A DNA stretch of 64,000 nucleotides from Selaginella moellendorffii (GCF_000143415.4 NW_003314296.1:124001-188000), one strand, 5' to 3'; numbered from the stretch's first letter, positions 5,554 through 41,843 are shown. Translations and numbers: made by a program. The notes: generated from the sequence alone by a model not told the origin.

Positions 5554-8500
5554 ATGCTATCTCGCGCCGTGCTGCGAAGGCGTGGAGCAGGAGGATTCAA
5601 GGCAATGGAGCTCGCATCAGTGCTCAACGTCGGCAATCGCTGCTCGCCAGGGATTCTCAGGCGCTTCCCTCATCACAGGAATCAGCTCGCTTGCTTCAGC
5701 CGCGTCTCGCGTCGAGCTCCATCGCCGGGCGACGCATTTGGAGCGTCTCTCTCCGTGTCGAGGAGGAAGCTTTGCAACGCTCCCCAAGCCGCGGTCGCTG
5801 CTCCAGCGCCGAAGATTGGTAAGAAATCCTCGTAATATCGATGAGAGTGATTGGATGGGATTGAATTGAATCGCTCGTTCTTCCAGGAGCCAATCCGGAC
5901 GTTGTCAAGGAGCTGGGATTTGAGGAAGTGAGGGAAGAGTTTATTTCCGAGTACAAATCTACTGCTGTGCTCTATCGACACAAGAAGACTGGGGCGGAGG
6001 TCATGTCGGTCGTGAACGAGGACGAGAACAAGGTCTTTGGAATCGTGTTTAGAACACCACCGTAAGCAATATATGAGTTTCATCCTGCTCACCCTCATTT
6101 CTTTGCCTTTGTTTTTTTGGTTTCTATGTGCAGCAAAGACTCCAAAGGAATTCCACACATTCTCGAGCACAGCGTTCTTTGTGGCTCCAGAAAATATCCT
6201 CTCAAAGAGCCATTTGTTGAGCTGCTCAAGGGAAGCTTGCATACGTTTCTGAATGCGTTCACGTATCCCGACCGGACTTGCTACCCTGTGGCTTCCACAA
6301 ACTTAAAGGTTAGTGATTGATTTTCCAGGTATTTGTTGATGGATCGAGTTTTCCACTTCCTTGCAGGATTTTTACAACCTAGTGGATGTTTATTTGGACG
6401 CTGTTTTTCATCCTCGTTGCGTAAGCGACCCGCAAATCTTTCAACAGGAAGGTTGGCATTACGAAGTTAACGATTTGTCTGAAGACCTCACATACAAAGG
6501 CAAGTTATTTGTCACTTCGAAGCTCCTTGTTGACTGGTGTCTATGGTGTTACACGCAGGTGTTGTGTTCAACGAAATGAAAGGTGTTTATTCGCAACCAG
6601 ATAGTGTTCTCGGCCGAATTTGCCAGCAGGTATGAGCCGCTTTTTAAGTTTGATATTTTTAAAAATTCATTCTTTCATTTTCTTTCATTGAAGGAATTAT
6701 TTCCTAATAATGCGTATAATGTGGACAGTGGTGGGGATCCATCTGTGATTCCTGATCTAACGTTTGAAGAGTTTCAGGTATTCTCGCTCTCTCTCATGAT
6801 TGTTATGTGACGAATTTACAATGATTAACAGGAGTTCCATAGAAAGTTCTATCATCCCAGTAATGCGAGGATATGGTTTTATGGGGACGATGATCCAACT
6901 GAACGACTTCGAATCGTGAATGGTCAGTGTGTTAAGTTTATGGTTCGTGCATTTACTGATCCGTGTGAGGAGCAGCCTATCTATCTAATTTTGAAGCCAA
7001 CAACTCAGCAGCAGAATCCGAAGTTAAACCTCAAAGTCTTCTCTCTGAGCCAAAGAAGATTAAAGAGAAATATGCAGTAGGAGAGGAGACTGACACGTCC
7101 AAAAAGCATATGGTCTCTATGAACTGGCTTCTTTCAGACAAGCCATTGGATCTGGAAACTGAGCTAGCTCTCGGCTTTCTAGATCATCTAATGCTAGGGA
7201 CGCCAGCAGCACCTCTAAGAAAGACGTTGCTTGAAAGTCACCTGGGAGAGGCTCTTACTTCAAGCGGAGTAGAAGATGACCTCCTTCAACCGCAATTTAG
7301 TATCGGCATGAAAGGCGTCGCCGAAAGTGATATCCCAGCAGTTGAGGAATTGATCGTATCTACATTACAAAAGCTAGCTGATGAAGGTTTCACGTCTGAA
7401 GCTGTCGAGGCTTCTATGAACACAATCGAGTTTGCACTAAGAGAGAACAACACTGGATCGTTCCCACGCGGACTATCTCTCATGCTGAGGTCGATGGTGA
7501 GTATTTTAGACATTTTGGTATTTAATGCATGCTCTTCTGACACTTCTTACAGGGTAACTGGCTGTATGGTCGTGATCCATTTGAACCTTTGAGATTCGCC
7601 AAGCCATTAGAAGATTTGAAGGCCAAGATAGCGACGGAGGGTGCTAAGGCAGTTTTCTCACCACTTATACAGAACTTCCTTCTTAGCAACAAGCATCTTG
7701 TGACTGTTGAGCTCCAGGTACGGTCTTACATGAAAAAGGTCCTTCGTACTGATTTGGAAGTGGTGTTGCTCAGCCGGATGCTGAAAAATCAGCAGAAATT
7801 GAAGCCTTGGAGAAGGAAAGACTGGCGAAGGTGAAAGCAAGCCTGGCAAAACAAGAGCTTGAGGAACTTGCTCGAGCAACCGAGGAGCTAAAGAAGCGCC
7901 AAGAAACGCCTGATCCTCCTGAGGCATTAAAAGCAGTACCATCTCTGTCACTGTCTGATATTCCAAAAGAGCCTATTCACGTTCCAATTGCTGTAAGTTC
8001 AATAATTAGCGTTCCTCATTGTCTAATGCCTGATTGATCAGATCGGTGAAATGCACGGCGCGACTATGTTACGTCATGATATCTTTACCAATGATGTCTT
8101 ATATGCAGAAGTTGCTTTTGAGCTGCGCACTGTTCCTTCTGAGCTTTTGCCCCTGGTTCCGCTTTTCTGGTCAGTACTACTTCTGTTCCTCTTATCGACG
8201 ATATTTAGTGGGCCGTTTAAATGTCCAGCCAATCTTTGCTCGAGATGGGAACAAAAGATATGGATTTTGTGTCGCTAAACCTGCTTATTGGTCGAAAGAC
8301 AGGAGGCATTTCTGTCTATCCTTCGACGTCCTCGGTTCGCGGGAAAAAAGAACCATCAAGCAAAATGATTATTCGTGGTAAAGCCATGGCTTCACAGGCG
8401 CAAGATCTCTTTAGTCTGGTATGTATTTTAGCATTCGTGGGCACTACTCTTACATGTCATGTATGTGATCAGATGCGAACAATCCTTCAAGACGTACAAT

Positions 8501-9809
8501 TTACTGACAAGGAACGATTTAAGCAGTTTGTGTCCCAGAGCAAGTCAGGCATGGAGGTAAAGTTGCCGGCACCATTTATCTCGCTGACAATTATCATAAA
8601 ACATTACAGAGCCGCCTTAGAGGTGCTGGCCACAGAATTGTGGCGTCACGGCTGGACGCAATGCTGAACATTCCTGGCGCTGTTGGAGAGAAAATGGGTG
8701 GTCTCAGGTACTTATAACTCCGCTTTAATTATCCTCTAAGTACCGTCTGTACAGTTATCTAGACTATCTGCGCGAATTAGAGAAGCAAGTGGACACCGAC
8801 TGGCCCGCAGTGCAACAGAATCTGGAAAGAATTCGGACGAGTTTTCTGTCTCGGAAAGGGGCCATCGTGAACTTGACAGCAGATGAGAAGAATTTGACCA
8901 AAGCAGACAGTTTTGTCAGTTCTCTACTCGAAGCCCTGCCTGAAACCGAGCCAGTTGTTTGCACGTGGAATGGTATTCTTCAACCATGCAATGAAGGCAT
9001 TATAGTTCCCACACAGGTAAGAGGAGAATCTCTCGTTCCCTTTTGTAACTTGGGCTTTTTTTCCCCCACAGGTGAACTACGTTGGTAAAGCAGCAAATTT
9101 GTACGATACAGGATATGAGCTCGATGGAAGCGCGTATGTTATTTCCAAGTACATTGGCAACACGTGGCTGTGGGATCGAGTGCGTGTGAGTGGTGGCGCT
9201 TACGGAGGCTTCTGCGACTTCGATTCTCATTCGGGTAATTCACCATCTAGTAGTTTCTCACAGTCACATTTCTGTCTCTCTCAGGCGTATTTACATACTT
9301 GTCCTACCGAGACCCGAATCTGGCAAAGACCATCGACAACTACGACTTAACCGTCCAGTTCCTGAGAGAGCTTGAACTGGACGATGACGCGCTCACCAAA
9401 GCTATCATTGGCACCATTGGAGATGTTGATTCGTATCAGCTTCCAGATGCAAAGGGTTACTCGAGGTACGCTGCACAAATCTACATTCCTTTTGGCATTT
9501 CCTTACCTCCTCTCGTCCATTCCAGTATGCTCCGCTACATTCTAGGAATCACAGAGGAAGAACGCAAGCTGCGAAGGGAGCAAATCCTATCAACAAGGTG
9601 CGTTGTCACTCTAATCACCACTGCTTTGATAGATCTTTACTCTTCCTCGCGTTTGTGCTGGCAGCCTCAGAGACTTCAAAGCGTTCGCGGACGTGCTTGA
9701 GCACGTCAAAGAGAAGGGCATTGTCGCGGCTGTAGCGTCCGCCGAGGACGTGGAATCCGCGAACAAGGAGCGGCCAGGCCTACTCCAGCCGAAGAAAGTC
9801 AGCCTGTAA
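5554..9809 (+). CDS. PREP: Presequence protease (pitrilysin family M16C), organelle-targeted, multi-exon
   Basis: Arg/Ser-rich transit peptide; inverted zinc motif GIPHILEHSVLCGSRKYP; FLNAFTYPDRTCYPVAS; ENNTGSFPRGL; WDRVRVSGGAYGG; YRDPNL; ends LLQPKKVSL-stop at 9809; many ~50-nt GT-AG introns. Confidence 0.95.
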
Positions 9810-11650: not shown

Positions 11651-11919
11651 CAGAAAGGTTTTTTTTTCCCACTGTAGTTTGTGAAAACTCTTTAATCAGG
11701 GGGTCTCTTATAAAATCTGGTCAGCGCATTGACAGGCAGGCATGTGATCAAAAGCGTAAGTTGGTGCGGCCGGGTTTGACTTTTTGCAACTTCGTGCATG
11801 TTAGGAACCACTTCGACGATGTGCGCGTAGAATTCTGGTCGTTAAAATAGTATTATTTTATATCACACATTGATTTAACGTCGGCCCGGTGACCATTCGC
11901 TCAGGCTGCGCTTGGATCC

Positions 11920-12384
11920 ATGGGCAAGTTCCGCTCCGCGTTGCTGCTCCTCTCTTTGATTACAACTGCGGGCTTGGTGTTACAGAGCTGCGAATCCAGA
12001 TTCCTGGAGAATGATCACGGGGGACTTGCTTTTAAAGGTACTAAAACCATTCTAAGCATGAAATATCCATCGTTGATCTTTATAGAGCTGGAAGATGTGA
12101 TCTTTTCAAATGACGAGACGAGCTCTTTGCCATCACAGAAATTCGAAGAGCAGGAGGTGAGTTTGTCTCCATTTCAAAGCTCTAAGATAGAGGCGAGTTT
12201 CCAAGCATGAGTATTTTTTAACACGAATAATCCCTAGAATCTGTCTAGTATTCCGTTCGAGAGCGGATGTGAGCCATTCGACGCAAGCCCAATCTGCAGG
12301 CGTCGAGGCCTTTCAGAACAGGATGACGATTACACGCTGCCTGCCGCAAATGTTCGTGACGAGGCCGCACTGAGCCCAACATAG
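11920..12384 (+). CDS. Small secreted peptide precursor (111 aa, 3 exons), PSY/phytosulfokine-like
   Basis: Exons 11920-12037, 12086-12156, 12238-12384 with GT-AG introns in compatible phase; signal peptide MGKFRSALLLLSLITTAGLVLQSCES; acidic pro-region; C-terminus GCEPFDASPICRRRGLSEQDDDYTLPAANVRDEAALSPT-stop. Confidence 0.7.
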
Positions 12385-12772
12385 GATGAAATAAAAGAGA
12401 GAGATTGGGAGTGAGAGTAAAACAAAAGAGAGAACAGTAGTTTTTTCTTCTGGTTCGAATCCGATTGGCATCTTTTTTCTTAGCATAATTTTGTTTGGGT
12501 GGTGGTTCTATCTGCTCCTGCAGGTTTCATGTGATCCTTAAATTCCAATGCATTTCTCAAGAAAGCTTGAAGCCCCAGATTCATGATAGACAAGGAAGCC
12601 ACATCTAATGCTCTCTAGATACTGCTCTTGAAAATCTCATCACACCCAATCACGCTTCAGTGCCCCCCTGCAACAATGCAAGGCTGCAGCTGCTGCTAGC
12701 ATCTCAAATCCCAATCCAAATCTTTCTCAACATTGGAGAAGAGGAAAACAATATAAAAACAAGAAGAATTTC

Positions 12773-13302: not shown

Positions 13303-14438
13303 ATGAGGCGGTGCGAGCAGCAGGCGGCATCATCGCCGGCGTCGTCCGAGTCTGATCAGATCGATCAGGAGCGGGATATCAACACAGAGCTCCTGGAGCT
13401 AAAGGCATTGCATATGCATCACAGAAGTATATATCTTTCTCTGGATCGTTTTGTTTTCGTTTTGCCGTCGTTGCAAGCACTGACTACCCATTTGTTCTTC
13501 TGCAAGGTCGCAGGAAACACATCGAAATCTCATCCGTGCCAGCGCCGCCAGCGCCGACAAGGCCTGCGCAGCAGCGGTGGCGGCCAAACAGTCAGCAGCT
13601 GGGCATCCTGGAGGAATTCTACGCGAAAGGGACGCCGCCATCGCAAGAAAACGTCACGGAGATAGCCGAGCTCATCGGCCACCACGGCCCGGTGGACGAA
13701 TCCAAAGTGTACTATTGGTTTCAGAACAAGAAGTCCCGCGAGAAACGCAAGCGGCGCCGCATCGAGGAGGCCAACGCCGCCTCTGGCGCCTCCGCCTCTT
13801 CTTCTCCCGCCGCCGCCAGTGCCACCGCCGCTTTCCAGCAGGATTTGTCCTCCTCCGCCCCTAGCGCTTCCGCTTCAGCTTCATCCGGTAAATCAATGAG
13901 CGATACTACTGCTCTCTCTCTCTCTCTCTCTCTTTCTTTCTCCATCTCTTTCGATCAATCCCATCGGTCTTTCATTTTCGTCCTCCTGGGTGCGAACAAA
14001 AAAAGAGAAGAACGAGAAAAATGAGAGTTTTCTTCTTCCTTGTTTCTTCTCGTCCTGATAGATAGATAGACAAGTCCCAGAGCGAGCAGTGCCGTATACT
14101 CCTAGCTAGACTGGACTGGGCAAGATCTTTGCTTCCTTTCTTTTCCTCTCCTAAACGGGCCAGCCATTTTTTTCTGTGCAGGGTCGGAGCAATTGCACCA
14201 TCCCGCCGCGCAGTCGTATGCTGCTGCCCAGATCGTGATTGACGGGGGCGTGGTTTCTATCATCGACGACAAATCGCCCTTCGATCTCGTGGGCCACTTT
14301 GGCGACGGCGCGGCGCTCTTCGATCCAGCGCTTGGGCGAATCGTTCCCACCAACGAGCGCGGCGTGACGCTGGAGCCTCTCGAGTCGCGGGCTTACACTC
14401 TCGTAAGGAAGACGAAGGAGGGATATGCCTTACCGTGA
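13303..14438 (+). CDS. WOX: WUSCHEL-related homeobox protein with WOX8/9/11/12-type C-terminal domain
   Basis: Probable exons 13303-13426, 13507-13887, ~14182-14438; homeodomain RWRPNSQQLGILEEFYAKGTPPSQENVTEIAELIGHHGPVDESKVYYWFQNKKSREKRK; C-terminal IVIDGG...PFDLVGHFGDGAALFD...VPTNERGVTLEPLESRAYTLV. Confidence 0.88.
13912..13940 (+). repeat. (CT)n microsatellite in WOX intron 2
   Basis: ctctctctctctctctctctctttctttc. Confidence 0.8.
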
Positions 14439-21049: not shown

Positions 21050-21230
<181 letters not shown>

Positions 21231-41199: not shown

Positions 41200-41843
41200 T
41201 TTTCTGTCAACCCTAAAGGGTGACTTGGCATGTTCTATATATATATATACCTTTGATTATACATGTGTGTTTTCCAAGAAAATCTCGGCGCAAGCTGCCA
41301 CCTTTCTCCGACTTCTCCGAAGTGATTGGCTCCACTGTCATCGAGCTCTTCCTTGTCCTCGGCAAAAAAAGTTGTCCAAGCGATGACCATCTGGCAGTGT
41401 CCAGCGGAAACAGCTGAAAACAAGCGATGTATCGCCCACTTTATCTCGGAAAAAACCGCCAGTCACAAACAGGGACTGCTGCTCGTCAATTACCCGCGAT
41501 TAATTAGTCCTCTAGACCCTGTAGAAGATTCGTCGCATTCTGGATGAAATGTCGCTTGAACGATGCACTTATAGGAAGGGGACTTGTAGTTTGATGATCA
41601 AGTCACTTGCCAAATCAAGTTTCTTCAAGTGTTAGAACAGTAAAATCCACAAGACACGAGCAAATGTAGAAGCTGTACTATCTTAGAGACTTACCATTTC
41701 GAGCATTCTTGTTCTCAGCCAATAGTTTTTCCAGGCATGCAGCTCTGGATAATCTCGTTTCTCGTCGCTATAAAACCCGAGACCATCAGAAACCAAAGGC
41801 AGTGTCTTAAGCTTTGCCTCCCCAAAGCATTCTCGATTCAATC

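What the first reader, a model, noticed from the sequence alone, without database searches (positions are those of the whole stretch)
11920..12384. Secreted peptide precursor combining a phytosulfokine-type pro-domain with a PSY-type mature motif
Seen: splicing at canonical sites gives a 111-aa protein the ORF track misses: signal peptide, acidic spacer, then C-x8-C-RRR-GLSEQDD-DYTLPAANVRD. Established: PSK precursors carry two Cys followed by basic residues shortly before DYIYTQ; PSY peptides follow DYxxPxANxxH (PSY1: DYGDPSANPKH); an acidic DY context is a tyrosylprotein sulfotransferase site. Inference: this is a hybrid or ancestral-type sulfated peptide hormone precursor (PSK scaffold, PSY-like ligand lacking the His), possibly an undescribed signalling family of seed-free plants.
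Basis: partly seen in the sequence, partly recalled or inferred. Interest (0 to 1): 0.78.

Follow-up and report, generated by a model that had tools for sequence, protein, structure and literature searches.

The report
Spikemoss PSY-like sulfated peptide gene
This is a real, expressed three-exon gene of the spikemoss Selaginella moellendorffii, already in public annotation as an unnamed protein; it most likely makes a divergent version of the known plant growth peptide PSY, not a PSK/PSY hybrid or a proven new hormone class.

Summary
Stranded RNA-seq confirms both GT..AG introns: 130 and 96 junction reads in run X20, plus a 400-nt transcript contig from another study.

The gene is not hidden. 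The protein is identical to SELMODRAFT_417552 / XP_002977653.1 / D8S2U4 ("hypothetical protein", Selaginella moellendorffii). The second haplotype, SELMODRAFT_419271, is 107/111 identical, and both are expressed about 1:1.

The C-terminal 18 residues, DYTLPAANVRDE(A/P)ALSPT, match the published PSY motif DYXXXX[AP]NXXHXP at D, Y, A7 and N8. The second haplotype also has P13. Both have Asp where PSY has its near-invariant His.

The "PSK scaffold" reading is not supported:
- The Pfam PSK model gives no hit.
- There is no YIYTQ.
- The basic block RRRGL resembles the proven SBT6.1 site of CLEL6 (RRRAL), so it is a general processing signal, not a PSK-specific one.
- Conservation of the Cys pair cannot be tested, because four sequence searches, one against 1.84 billion proteins, found only the gene and its allele.

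This scan already reported the allelic copy on other DNA (s1-431151) with the same verdict, and it noted other His-less PSY-like genes in this genome. Verdict: a divergent lycophyte PSY-like precursor of modest interest.

The parts
11854..11863 (+). AT-rich TATA-like element (TATTTTATAT), about 12-30 nt upstream of the 5'-most RNA reads
   Evidence: Read directly from the sequence. Its function is inferred, not tested.
11875..11919 (+). 5' UTR (minimum extent)
   Evidence: The X1 transcript contig starts at 11875, directly after adapter letters. X20 coverage is low here and rises steeply from 11913 to 11936.
11920..12037 (+). Exon 1 coding part: Met1-Lys39 plus the first base of codon 40. It contains the signal peptide: n-region MGKFR, hydrophobic core S6-L21, and a likely cleavage site around residues 22-25.
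   Evidence: hydropathy 2.0-2.1 over residues 6-21. AF2 predicts a helix at 4-25. SignalP was not available.
12038..12085 (+). Intron 1, 48 nt, GT..AG
   Evidence: 130 (X20) and 7 (X21) junction reads, plus contigs in X1 and X5. for the splice-site letters.
12086..12156 (+). Exon 2: acidic spacer (E40-E63)
12157..12237 (+). Intron 2, 81 nt, GT..AG. A minor alternative acceptor moves the exon 3 start to 12249, which shifts the frame and is non-productive.
   Evidence: 96 against 12 reads in X20, and 6 against 2 in X21. for the translation of the minor form.
12238..12384 (+). Exon 3 coding part: N64-T111 plus the stop codon
   Evidence: 100% identical to residues 64-111 of P0001.
12268..12297 (+). 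Cys74-x8-Cys83 pair in the pro-region
   Evidence: Identical in both haplotypes. A disulfide is inferred only.
12298..12312 (+). R84-R85-R86-G87-L88: basic block that fits the RRxL / RxxL subtilase (S1P/SBT6.1-type) recognition motif
   Evidence: Sequence. The motif definition and the CLEL6 and RALF23 sites come from PMC13082318. Cleavage is inferred.
12322..12333 (+). D92-D93-D94-Y95: acidic Asp-Tyr context, the predicted TPST sulfation site and the only Tyr in the protein
   Evidence: The DY/acidic rule is quoted in PMC13074997. Sulfation was not tested.
12328..12381 (+). Predicted mature peptide D94-T111 (18 aa), DYTLPAANVRDE(A/P)ALSPT, which runs to the C-terminus of the protein. PSY motif positions: D1, Y2, P5, A7 and N8 are kept, position 11 is Asp instead of His, and position 13 is Ala (this haplotype) or Pro (the other).
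   Evidence: Motif DYXXXX[AP]NXXHXP from PMC11641228. AtPSY1 18-mer from PMC8462819.
12385..12480 (+). 3' UTR with AATAAA at 12390-12395. Read depth fades out between about 12430 and 12480.
   Evidence: In the other haplotype, SNP 12394 A>G lies inside the AATAAA.

Best explanation
The locus is the S. moellendorffii gene LOC9656416 / SELMODRAFT_417552. It encodes a 111-aa prepropeptide of a post-translationally modified, tyrosine-sulfated signalling peptide that is a divergent relative of the PSY family.

Shown:
- The gene is transcribed from the + strand and spliced as modelled.
- Both alleles are expressed.
- The product has a hydrophobic N-terminal leader.
- AF2 predicts an acidic (pI about 4.1) pro-region with no confident fold.
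- One Tyr sits in a DDDY context.
- The C-terminal 18-mer matches the PSY core at D1, Y2, P5, A7 and N8.

Inferred pathway:
1. The signal peptide is removed near residue 23-24.
2. Golgi TPST sulfates Tyr95.
3. An S1P/SBT6.1-type subtilase cuts after R85-R86-G87-L88.
4. Asp-directed subtilases or aminopeptidases trim SEQDD, leaving D94-T111. No C-terminal cut is needed, because the protein ends there.
5. Pro98 and/or Pro110 may be hydroxylated.
6. The peptide is perceived by a PSYR-type LRR receptor kinase of subfamily XI.

Cys74-Cys83 may form a small loop that presents the cleavage site, or it may have no role.
For: - Gene model and expression.
- Identity to the annotated protein and its allele.
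- Motif: D, Y, [AP]7 and N8 of DYXXXX[AP]NXXHXP (PMC11641228) are present, as is P5 as in AtPSY1 DYGDPSANPKHDPGVPPS (PMC8462819).
- Against AtPSY1, 6 of 18 residues are identical (D1, Y2, P5, A7, N8, P17). Both peptides are 18 residues long counted from the Asp.
- The other haplotype carries Pro at motif position 13.
- Chance estimate: DYxxPx[AP]N at 2.5e-5 and RRxL followed by DY at 2.7e-4 in shuffles.
- No substitution between the haplotypes falls in residues 59-105, which hold the Cys pair, the RRRGL block and the DY core.
- The processing-site analogy rests on experimentally mapped sites (PMC13082318).
- PSY signalling is ancient: a functional PSY and PSYR1/2 exist in the moss P. patens (PMC13618415).
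- AF2 finds no fold beyond the leader helix, as expected for this class of precursor.
- Independent notes of this scan report several other PSY-like genes in the same genome, some His-less. I did not check these myself.
Against: - His11 is conserved in 31 of 32 aligned PSY sequences together with D, Y, N and P (PMC7913133). Here it is Asp in both haplotypes, and Pro13 is Ala in this haplotype.
- Searches found no statistically supported homology to any PSY precursor, nor any homologue at all beyond the allele. Pfam and the Atlas also gave nothing. The family assignment therefore rests on 5-6 residues.
- Haplotype differences in the CDS are 4 non-synonymous to 2 synonymous, so there is no measurable purifying selection, though power is very low.
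- Fragment ends pile up at 11922, inside the ATG, so part of the mRNA may lack the start codon.
- Sulfation, cleavage, secretion and receptor binding are all untested.
Confidence: 0.55

Rival explanations
1. A lineage-specific sulfated (or otherwise modified) secreted peptide that is not homologous to PSY. On this reading the DYxxPxAN resemblance is convergent or chance, and the peptide acts through a different receptor. It would be a separate, lycophyte-restricted family.
For: - No homologue in 1.84 billion representative proteins or in the word-indexed 5.8 billion.
- The near-invariant His is missing (for the rule, for both alleles).
- The moss P. patens has PSY-like (PSYL) peptides with shifted H/P positions and distinct activity (bioRxiv 10.1101/2024.05.13.593875). 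So DY peptides around the PSY theme diversify in non-seed plants.
Against: - The core matches PSY at five positions with a low chance expectation.
- The length (18 aa), the C-terminal position and the precursor size (111 aa; the median for PSY-like precursors is about 110 aa) all fit PSY.
- Short peptide precursors routinely escape sequence searches (stated in PMC8462819), so finding no hits is weak evidence.
Confidence: 0.2
2. One reading: a hybrid or ancestral precursor that combines a genuine PSK-type pro-domain (Cys pair plus basic residues) with a PSY-type ligand, pointing to a common origin of PSK and PSY precursors.
For: - C74-x8-C83 is followed directly by RRR.
- The basic residues lie 8-10 residues before D94. 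PSK precursors have conserved dibasic residues 8-10 aa upstream of the mature peptide (PMC2667306).
- The combined pattern C..C..RR..DY is rare in shuffles (2e-5), although it was defined post hoc.
- From my own recollection of Lorbiecke & Sauter 2002, not verified in the papers held here: PSK precursors carry two conserved Cys just before the RR.
Against: - The Pfam PSK model gives no hit on the whole protein or on exon 3, even at E<=10.
- There is no YIYTQ and no His-x-Asp before the Tyr.
- RRRGL matches the SBT6.1 sites of CLEL6 and RALF23 just as well, so the basic block is not PSK-specific.
- As I recall the PSK signature (C-x(4-9)-[ED]-x-C-x2-RR), its acidic residue two before the second Cys and its two-residue gap before RR are both absent here.
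- No homologues exist to show that the Cys pair is conserved.
Confidence: 0.1
3. It is not a hormone precursor. It would instead be a young orphan gene for a small secreted acidic protein of other or no function, or a transcript whose main form is not translated into this protein.
For: - It is an orphan in all searches.
- The 4:2 non-synonymous to synonymous differences between haplotypes show no detectable constraint.
- There is a 5'-end pile-up at 11922.
- About 11% of transcripts use a frame-shifting acceptor.
Against: - Expression is robust and spliced in several independent studies.
- The intact ORF is identical in architecture in both haplotypes.
- The combination of leader, acidic spacer, RRxL, DDDY and a PSY-like C-terminal 18-mer is the textbook layout of a modified-peptide precursor.
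Confidence: 0.15

Closest known systems
[quoted passage not shown]
   Same: - A precursor of about 70-120 aa with an N-terminal leader and a variable pro-region.
- One DY at the start of a C-terminal motif.
- Positions D1, Y2, P5, A7 and N8 are identical to AtPSY1, and P17 as well.
- The peptide is 18 residues long.
- The second haplotype has the motif's P13.
   Different: - Asp replaces the near-invariant His11, and Ala replaces Pro13 in this haplotype.
- The peptide ends the protein, so there is no C-terminal extension to remove.
- There is a Cys pair and an RRRGL block just upstream.
- No homology is detectable by sequence search.
Phytosulfokine (PSK) precursors (Pfam PF06404)
   Same: - A small secreted precursor with an acidic pro-region.
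- Basic residues 8-10 aa upstream of the sulfated Tyr (PMC2667306).
- Two Cys shortly before them (the PSK side of this comparison is from my own knowledge).
   Different: - No YIYTQ, and only one Tyr.
- No His-x-Asp before the Tyr.
- The Pfam PSK model does not match.
- The predicted ligand is an 18-mer, not a pentapeptide.
RGF/GLV/CLEL precursors (for example CLEL6, cut by SBT6.1 at ERRRA|L|GG and then by SBT3.8 before DY)
   Same: - An RRR-small-Leu block upstream of an Asp-Tyr peptide.
- The two-step maturation scheme, with an S1P-type pre-cut followed by trimming to DY, is the best available model for this precursor.
   Different: - The mature motif lacks the RGF hallmarks: the Pro-rich centre and the C-terminal His-Asn, as in DYSNPGHHPPRHN.
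- Here the basic block lies only 7 residues from the DY.
PSY-like (PSYL) peptides of the moss Physcomitrium patens (bioRxiv 10.1101/2024.05.13.593875)
   Same: - PSY-related DY peptides of a non-seed plant that depart from the canonical spacing or identity of the H and P positions.
- Precursors of about 110 aa.
   Different: - PSYL peptides keep N, H and P (DYDNH*P / DYD*NHP).
- The spikemoss peptide keeps the canonical A7-N8 spacing but has no His.
CIF/TWS1 peptides
   Same: An N-terminal sulfated DY, and DYxxP as in TWS1 (DYNFPV, PMC13082318).
   Different: It has none of the Pro-rich tail (PxPPLxxPxPF, PMC8462819), and it is shorter.

Membership tests
PSY family | Small precursor (60-200 aa) with an N-terminal secretion signal | tested here: met
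   111 aa. Hydrophobic core at residues 6-21 with Kyte-Doolittle values about 2.0-2.1. AF2 leader helix at 4-25. SignalP itself was not available.
PSY family | Motif lies in the C-terminal region and starts with Asp-Tyr in an acidic context (TPST site) | tested here: met
   D92-D93-D94-Y95. The motif occupies the last 18 residues, and Tyr95 is the only Tyr. Criterion from PMC11641228.
PSY family | [Ala/Pro]7-Asn8 of DYXXXX[AP]NXXHXP | tested here: met
   A100-N101. Occurs at 5e-4 in shuffles.
PSY family | His at motif position 11 (one of the five conserved residues D, Y, N, H, P; all five present in 31 of 32 aligned sequences) | tested here: not met
   Asp104 in both haplotypes. Rule from PMC7913133.
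PSY family | Pro at motif position 13 | tested here: inconclusive
   Ala106 in this haplotype and Pro106 in the other (P0004). Both alleles are seen at about 1:1 in RNA (12364 G>C, 41 of 75 reads).
PSY family | Sequence homology to known PSY precursors | tested here: not met
   phmmer of exon 3 against 1.84 billion representatives found only itself and two chance repeat proteins. Three word searches found only itself. This is weak negative evidence, because PSY pro-regions are not conserved even among angiosperms.
PSY family | Tyr sulfation, proteolytic release, and binding to PSYR receptors | not testable with these tools
   Needs mass spectrometry, a TPST assay and receptor-binding assays.
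PSK (phytosulfokine) precursors | YIYTQ (or YIYTH) pentapeptide | tested here: not met
   Absent from the protein. The window's only Y[IV]YT matches are a stray IYIYT at 41240-41251 (+), far from this gene, and translated simple repeats near 21.1 kb.
PSK (phytosulfokine) precursors | Match to the Pfam PSK model (PF06404) | tested here: not met
   No family at E<=10 for exon 3, P0001 or P0004.
PSK (phytosulfokine) precursors | Dibasic residues 8-10 aa upstream of the mature peptide | tested here: met
   R84-R86 lie 8-10 residues before D94. Rule from PMC2667306. The feature is not specific to PSK.
PSK (phytosulfokine) precursors | Conserved Cys pair of the PSK signature, with an acidic residue two before the second Cys and RR two residues after it (own recollection of Lorbiecke & Sauter 2002) | tested here: inconclusive
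   A Cys pair is present (C-x8-C). However, Pro, not Asp/Glu, sits two residues before C83, and RRR follows with no gap. The signature could not be verified in the papers held.
RGF/GLV/CLEL | DY peptide of about 13 aa with a Pro-rich centre and C-terminal His-Asn | tested here: not met
   The peptide ends ...ALSPT and has no HN. RGF1 sequence from PMC8462819.
CIF/TWS1 | DYxxxxPxPPLxxPxPF-type Pro-rich 20-21-mer | tested here: not met
   Only two Pro in the 18-mer and no PxPP. Query motif from PMC8462819.

The most novel reading that the evidence does not exclude
Lycophytes carry their own His-less branch of PSY-like sulfated peptides, in which Asp or another residue takes the place of the invariant His. 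This gene and the other His-less copies noted elsewhere in the genome would belong to it. The precursor retains a Cys-pair/RRxL module like that of PSK precursors. That would imply that PSK and PSY precursors descend from one ancestral sulfopeptide precursor, and that receptor recognition of the His position was re-tuned in this lineage.
Probability: 0.1. Interest if true: 0.7.

Novelty: new variant of a known kind. Interest (0 to 1): 0.33.

Why it matters
The papers I read trace PSY signalling to mosses, liverworts and a gymnosperm (PMC8462819), and functional work exists in Physcomitrium (PMC13618415). I found no PSY ligand described for the lycophyte S. moellendorffii in those papers.

A transcribed PSY-like gene would help fill the gap between bryophytes and seed plants. 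It keeps the sulfation site and the A-N core but replaces the near-invariant His.

It also offers a natural experiment on what the His contributes to PSYR recognition. The His-to-Asp difference, and the Ala/Pro polymorphism at position 13, could be tested with synthetic peptides.

The gain is incremental. The gene is already annotated as a hypothetical protein, the class is known, and this scan had already reached the same verdict on the allelic copy.

Tried and rejected
- Pfam on each exon and on the whole protein: no family.
- ESM Atlas feature search with exon 3: no usable hit.
- Word-indexed protein search with exon 3, with residues 60-111 of P0001, and with all of P0001: only the gene itself.
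- phmmer of exon 3 against 1.84 billion representatives: the gene itself, plus P0002 (1427 aa, 8 stretches) and P0003 (a 433-aa tandem-repeat protein). I dismiss P0003, whose sequence I read, as a compositional or repeat match, and P0002 on its table row alone (8 matched stretches, 33% identity); I did not fetch its sequence.
- AF2 of the single sequence: mean pLDDT 56, with only the leader confidently helical. No fold search was run, because a low-confidence model gives meaningless matches.
- The bacterial promoter/terminator scan is irrelevant for a plant gene and found nothing.
- One paper search was too loose and returned nothing useful.
- The PSK Cys signature could not be found in the PSK papers held.
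- Run X12, from a different organism ("organism B"), holds 15% of the words of the stretch.
Exons were searched separately by reference, and whole-protein searches used P0001, the identical sequence returned by the library. The only joining was inside a local script, by coordinates, to check identity with P0001.

Full report
**What is there.** On the + strand, three exons (11920-12037, 12086-12156, 12238-12384) encode 111 residues. The exon translations give M1-K39, L41-E63 and N64-T111, and codon 40 (Glu) spans intron 1. The introns are 48 nt (GTACTA..TATAG) and 81 nt (GTGAGT..CCTAG).

**Transcript evidence.** I laid RNA reads on window:11600-12900.
- In the stranded run X20, 130 reads join 12037 to 12086 and 96 reads join 12156 to 12238.
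- Run X21 shows 7 and 6 reads for the same joints.
- A 400-nt contig from another study (X1) carries both joints, and a contig from a third study (X5) carries the first.
- All first mates lie on the - strand, so the RNA is + strand.
- A minor acceptor moves the exon 3 start to 12249 (12 reads in X20, 2 in X21). It shifts the frame and would give a 70-aa product without the Cys pair or the DY motif.
- Four reads also suggest a rare GC..AG intron at 11924-11985 inside the leader. It is below the tool's listing threshold, so I treat it as noise.

**The 5' end.** The X1 contig starts at 11875. In X20, coverage is only 9 reads at 11913 against 74 at 11936, and 17 fragment ends pile up at 11922. This could be the usual loss of 5' ends in cDNA libraries, or a start site that partly excludes the AUG. 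It needs CAGE or RACE.

**Identity and organism.** I searched exon 3 (48 aa, by reference) with phmmer against 1.84 billion representative proteins. It returned a 111-aa protein, P0001, identical over residues 64-111. P0001 is hypothetical protein SELMODRAFT_417552 / EFJ20991.1 / XP_002977653.1 / D8S2U4 of Selaginella moellendorffii. A local script confirmed that the CDS built from the window coordinates translates exactly to P0001.

Only its function is unassigned.

**The second haplotype.** The same 90% cluster holds P0004 (SELMODRAFT_419271), which is 107/111 identical with S6F, L21V, K58R and A106P. The same differences appear as roughly 50% variants in the X20 reads, at 11936, 11980, 12140 and 12364, together with two synonymous sites. 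Both haplotypes of the sequenced plant are therefore expressed about equally.

That is almost certainly the allelic copy. Its follow-up reached the same verdict as mine.

**Anatomy of the protein**.
- Leader: MGKFR followed by a hydrophobic core at residues 6-21. This is the only confidently helical part of the AF2 model.
- Pro-region: acidic (pI 4.1, 20 Asp+Glu against 7 Lys+Arg), with no predicted fold.
- Features in order: Cys74-x8-Cys83, Arg84-Arg86-Gly-Leu88, Ser-Glu-Gln, Asp92-Asp93-Asp94-Tyr95, then TLPAANVRDEAALSPT to the stop codon.
- Tyr95 is the only Tyr.
- A third Cys (C24) sits at the likely signal-peptide cleavage site.

**Comparison with PSY.**
- The five residues D, Y, N, H and P are all present in 31 of 32 aligned sequences (PMC7913133).
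- AtPSY1 is DYGDPSANPKHDPGVPPS (PMC8462819) and occupies residues 48-65 of a 75-aa precursor (PMC8872720).
- The spikemoss peptide D94-T111 has D1, Y2, P5, A7, N8 and P17 identical to AtPSY1. R10, E12 and T18 are conservative changes.
- It is also 18 residues long, but it ends the protein.
- Position 11 is Asp instead of His in both haplotypes.
- Position 13 is Ala here and Pro in the other haplotype, so that allele restores one more motif residue.
- In 200,000 shuffles of the pro-region, DY-x4-[AP]N appears at 5e-4 and DYxxPx[AP]N at 2.5e-5. Even so, the core is unlikely to be chance.
- In the six-frame translation of the window, DY..P..N occurs only here.

**Comparison with PSK.**
- Basic residues 8-10 aa upstream of the peptide are indeed reported for PSK precursors (PMC2667306). 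Here Arg84-86 lie 8-10 residues before Asp94.
- That feature is not specific to PSK. The experimentally mapped SBT6.1/S1P sites are ERRRA|L|GG in CLEL6 and RRIL| in RALF23, and RxxL/RxLx is the general motif (PMC13082318). RRRGL is nearly the CLEL6 site.
- The Pfam PSK model does not match the protein at E<=10.
- There is no YIYTQ.
- As I remember the PSK Cys signature (Lorbiecke & Sauter 2002), it fits only loosely. I could not verify it in the papers held.
- Conservation of the Cys pair cannot be judged, because no homologue beyond the allele exists in the searched collections.

I therefore do not accept the hybrid reading, although it is not excluded.

**Other DY families.** RGF peptides (C-terminal His-Asn) and CIF/TWS1 peptides (Pro-rich tail) fit worse.

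**Most likely mechanism** (inferred; see the best explanation). The steps would be co-translational removal of the leader, TPST sulfation of Tyr95 in its DDDY context, an S1P-type pre-cut after RRGL, and N-terminal trimming to Asp94. Pro hydroxylation is possible. The 18-mer would then be perceived by a PSYR-clade LRR receptor kinase. PSY-PSYR signalling is functional in the moss P. patens (PMC13618415), so it predates the lycophyte lineage. None of these biochemical steps was or could be tested here.

**Selection.** The haplotypes differ at 6 CDS sites, 4 non-synonymous and 2 synonymous. That is too few to show constraint. None falls in residues 59-105, which hold the Cys pair, the RRRGL block and the DY core.

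**Surroundings.**
- Upstream on the + strand lie exons of a presequence-protease-like M16C peptidase (Pfam Peptidase_M16_C, M16C_assoc and PreP_C at 7110-9697).
- Downstream on the + strand is a homeodomain ORF at 13536-14021.
- Neither suggests a functional link.
- No second DY-peptide gene lies in the window.

- Read laying received 1,301 letters.
- Exons were searched separately by reference.
Whole-protein searches used the library's own P0001.
- The single joining step was a local identity check by coordinates.

**Verdict.** It is a new variant of a known kind, already annotated as a hypothetical protein, and this scan has already reported its allele.

Noticed in passing
window 11936, 11980, 12009, 12024, 12140, 12364, 12394: About 50% variant reads in RNA run X20 match the second-haplotype protein P0004, so both alleles are expressed about equally. 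The variant at 12394 (A>G) lies inside the AATAAA poly(A) signal of this haplotype.
   Followed up: partly
window 11922-11986: 17 fragment ends pile up at 11922, two bases into the ATG. Four reads also join about 11923 to 11986, which would be a 62-nt GC..AG intron (GCAAGT donor) that removes most of the leader and shifts the frame.
   Followed up: no
window 7110-9697 (+): ORF pieces with Pfam Peptidase_M16_C, M16C_assoc and PreP_C. These are exons of a presequence-protease (PreP)-like gene upstream of the peptide gene.
   Followed up: partly
window 13536-14021 (+): ORF with a homeodomain (Pfam PF00046, E 1.9e-11). This is a homeobox gene about 1.2 kb downstream of the peptide gene.
   Followed up: no
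window 12475-12664: A low-depth (3x) 190-nt contig in run X1, beyond the main 3' end of the gene. It could be a longer 3' UTR form or a separate transcript.
   Followed up: no
window 21050-21223: An AT-rich simple repeat that translates as IYIYIY... runs. It produces false YIYT (PSK-like) pattern matches.
   Followed up: no
runs X20 and X21 on window 11900-12400: About ten-fold difference in depth between two equally sized RNA runs of one study (about 100-170 against about 10). The gene is differentially expressed between those samples, but the sample identities are coded.
   Followed up: no
run X12 (organism B): A run from a different organism holds 15% of the sampled words of window:11700-12700. 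This may be an orthologue in a related species.
   Followed up: no
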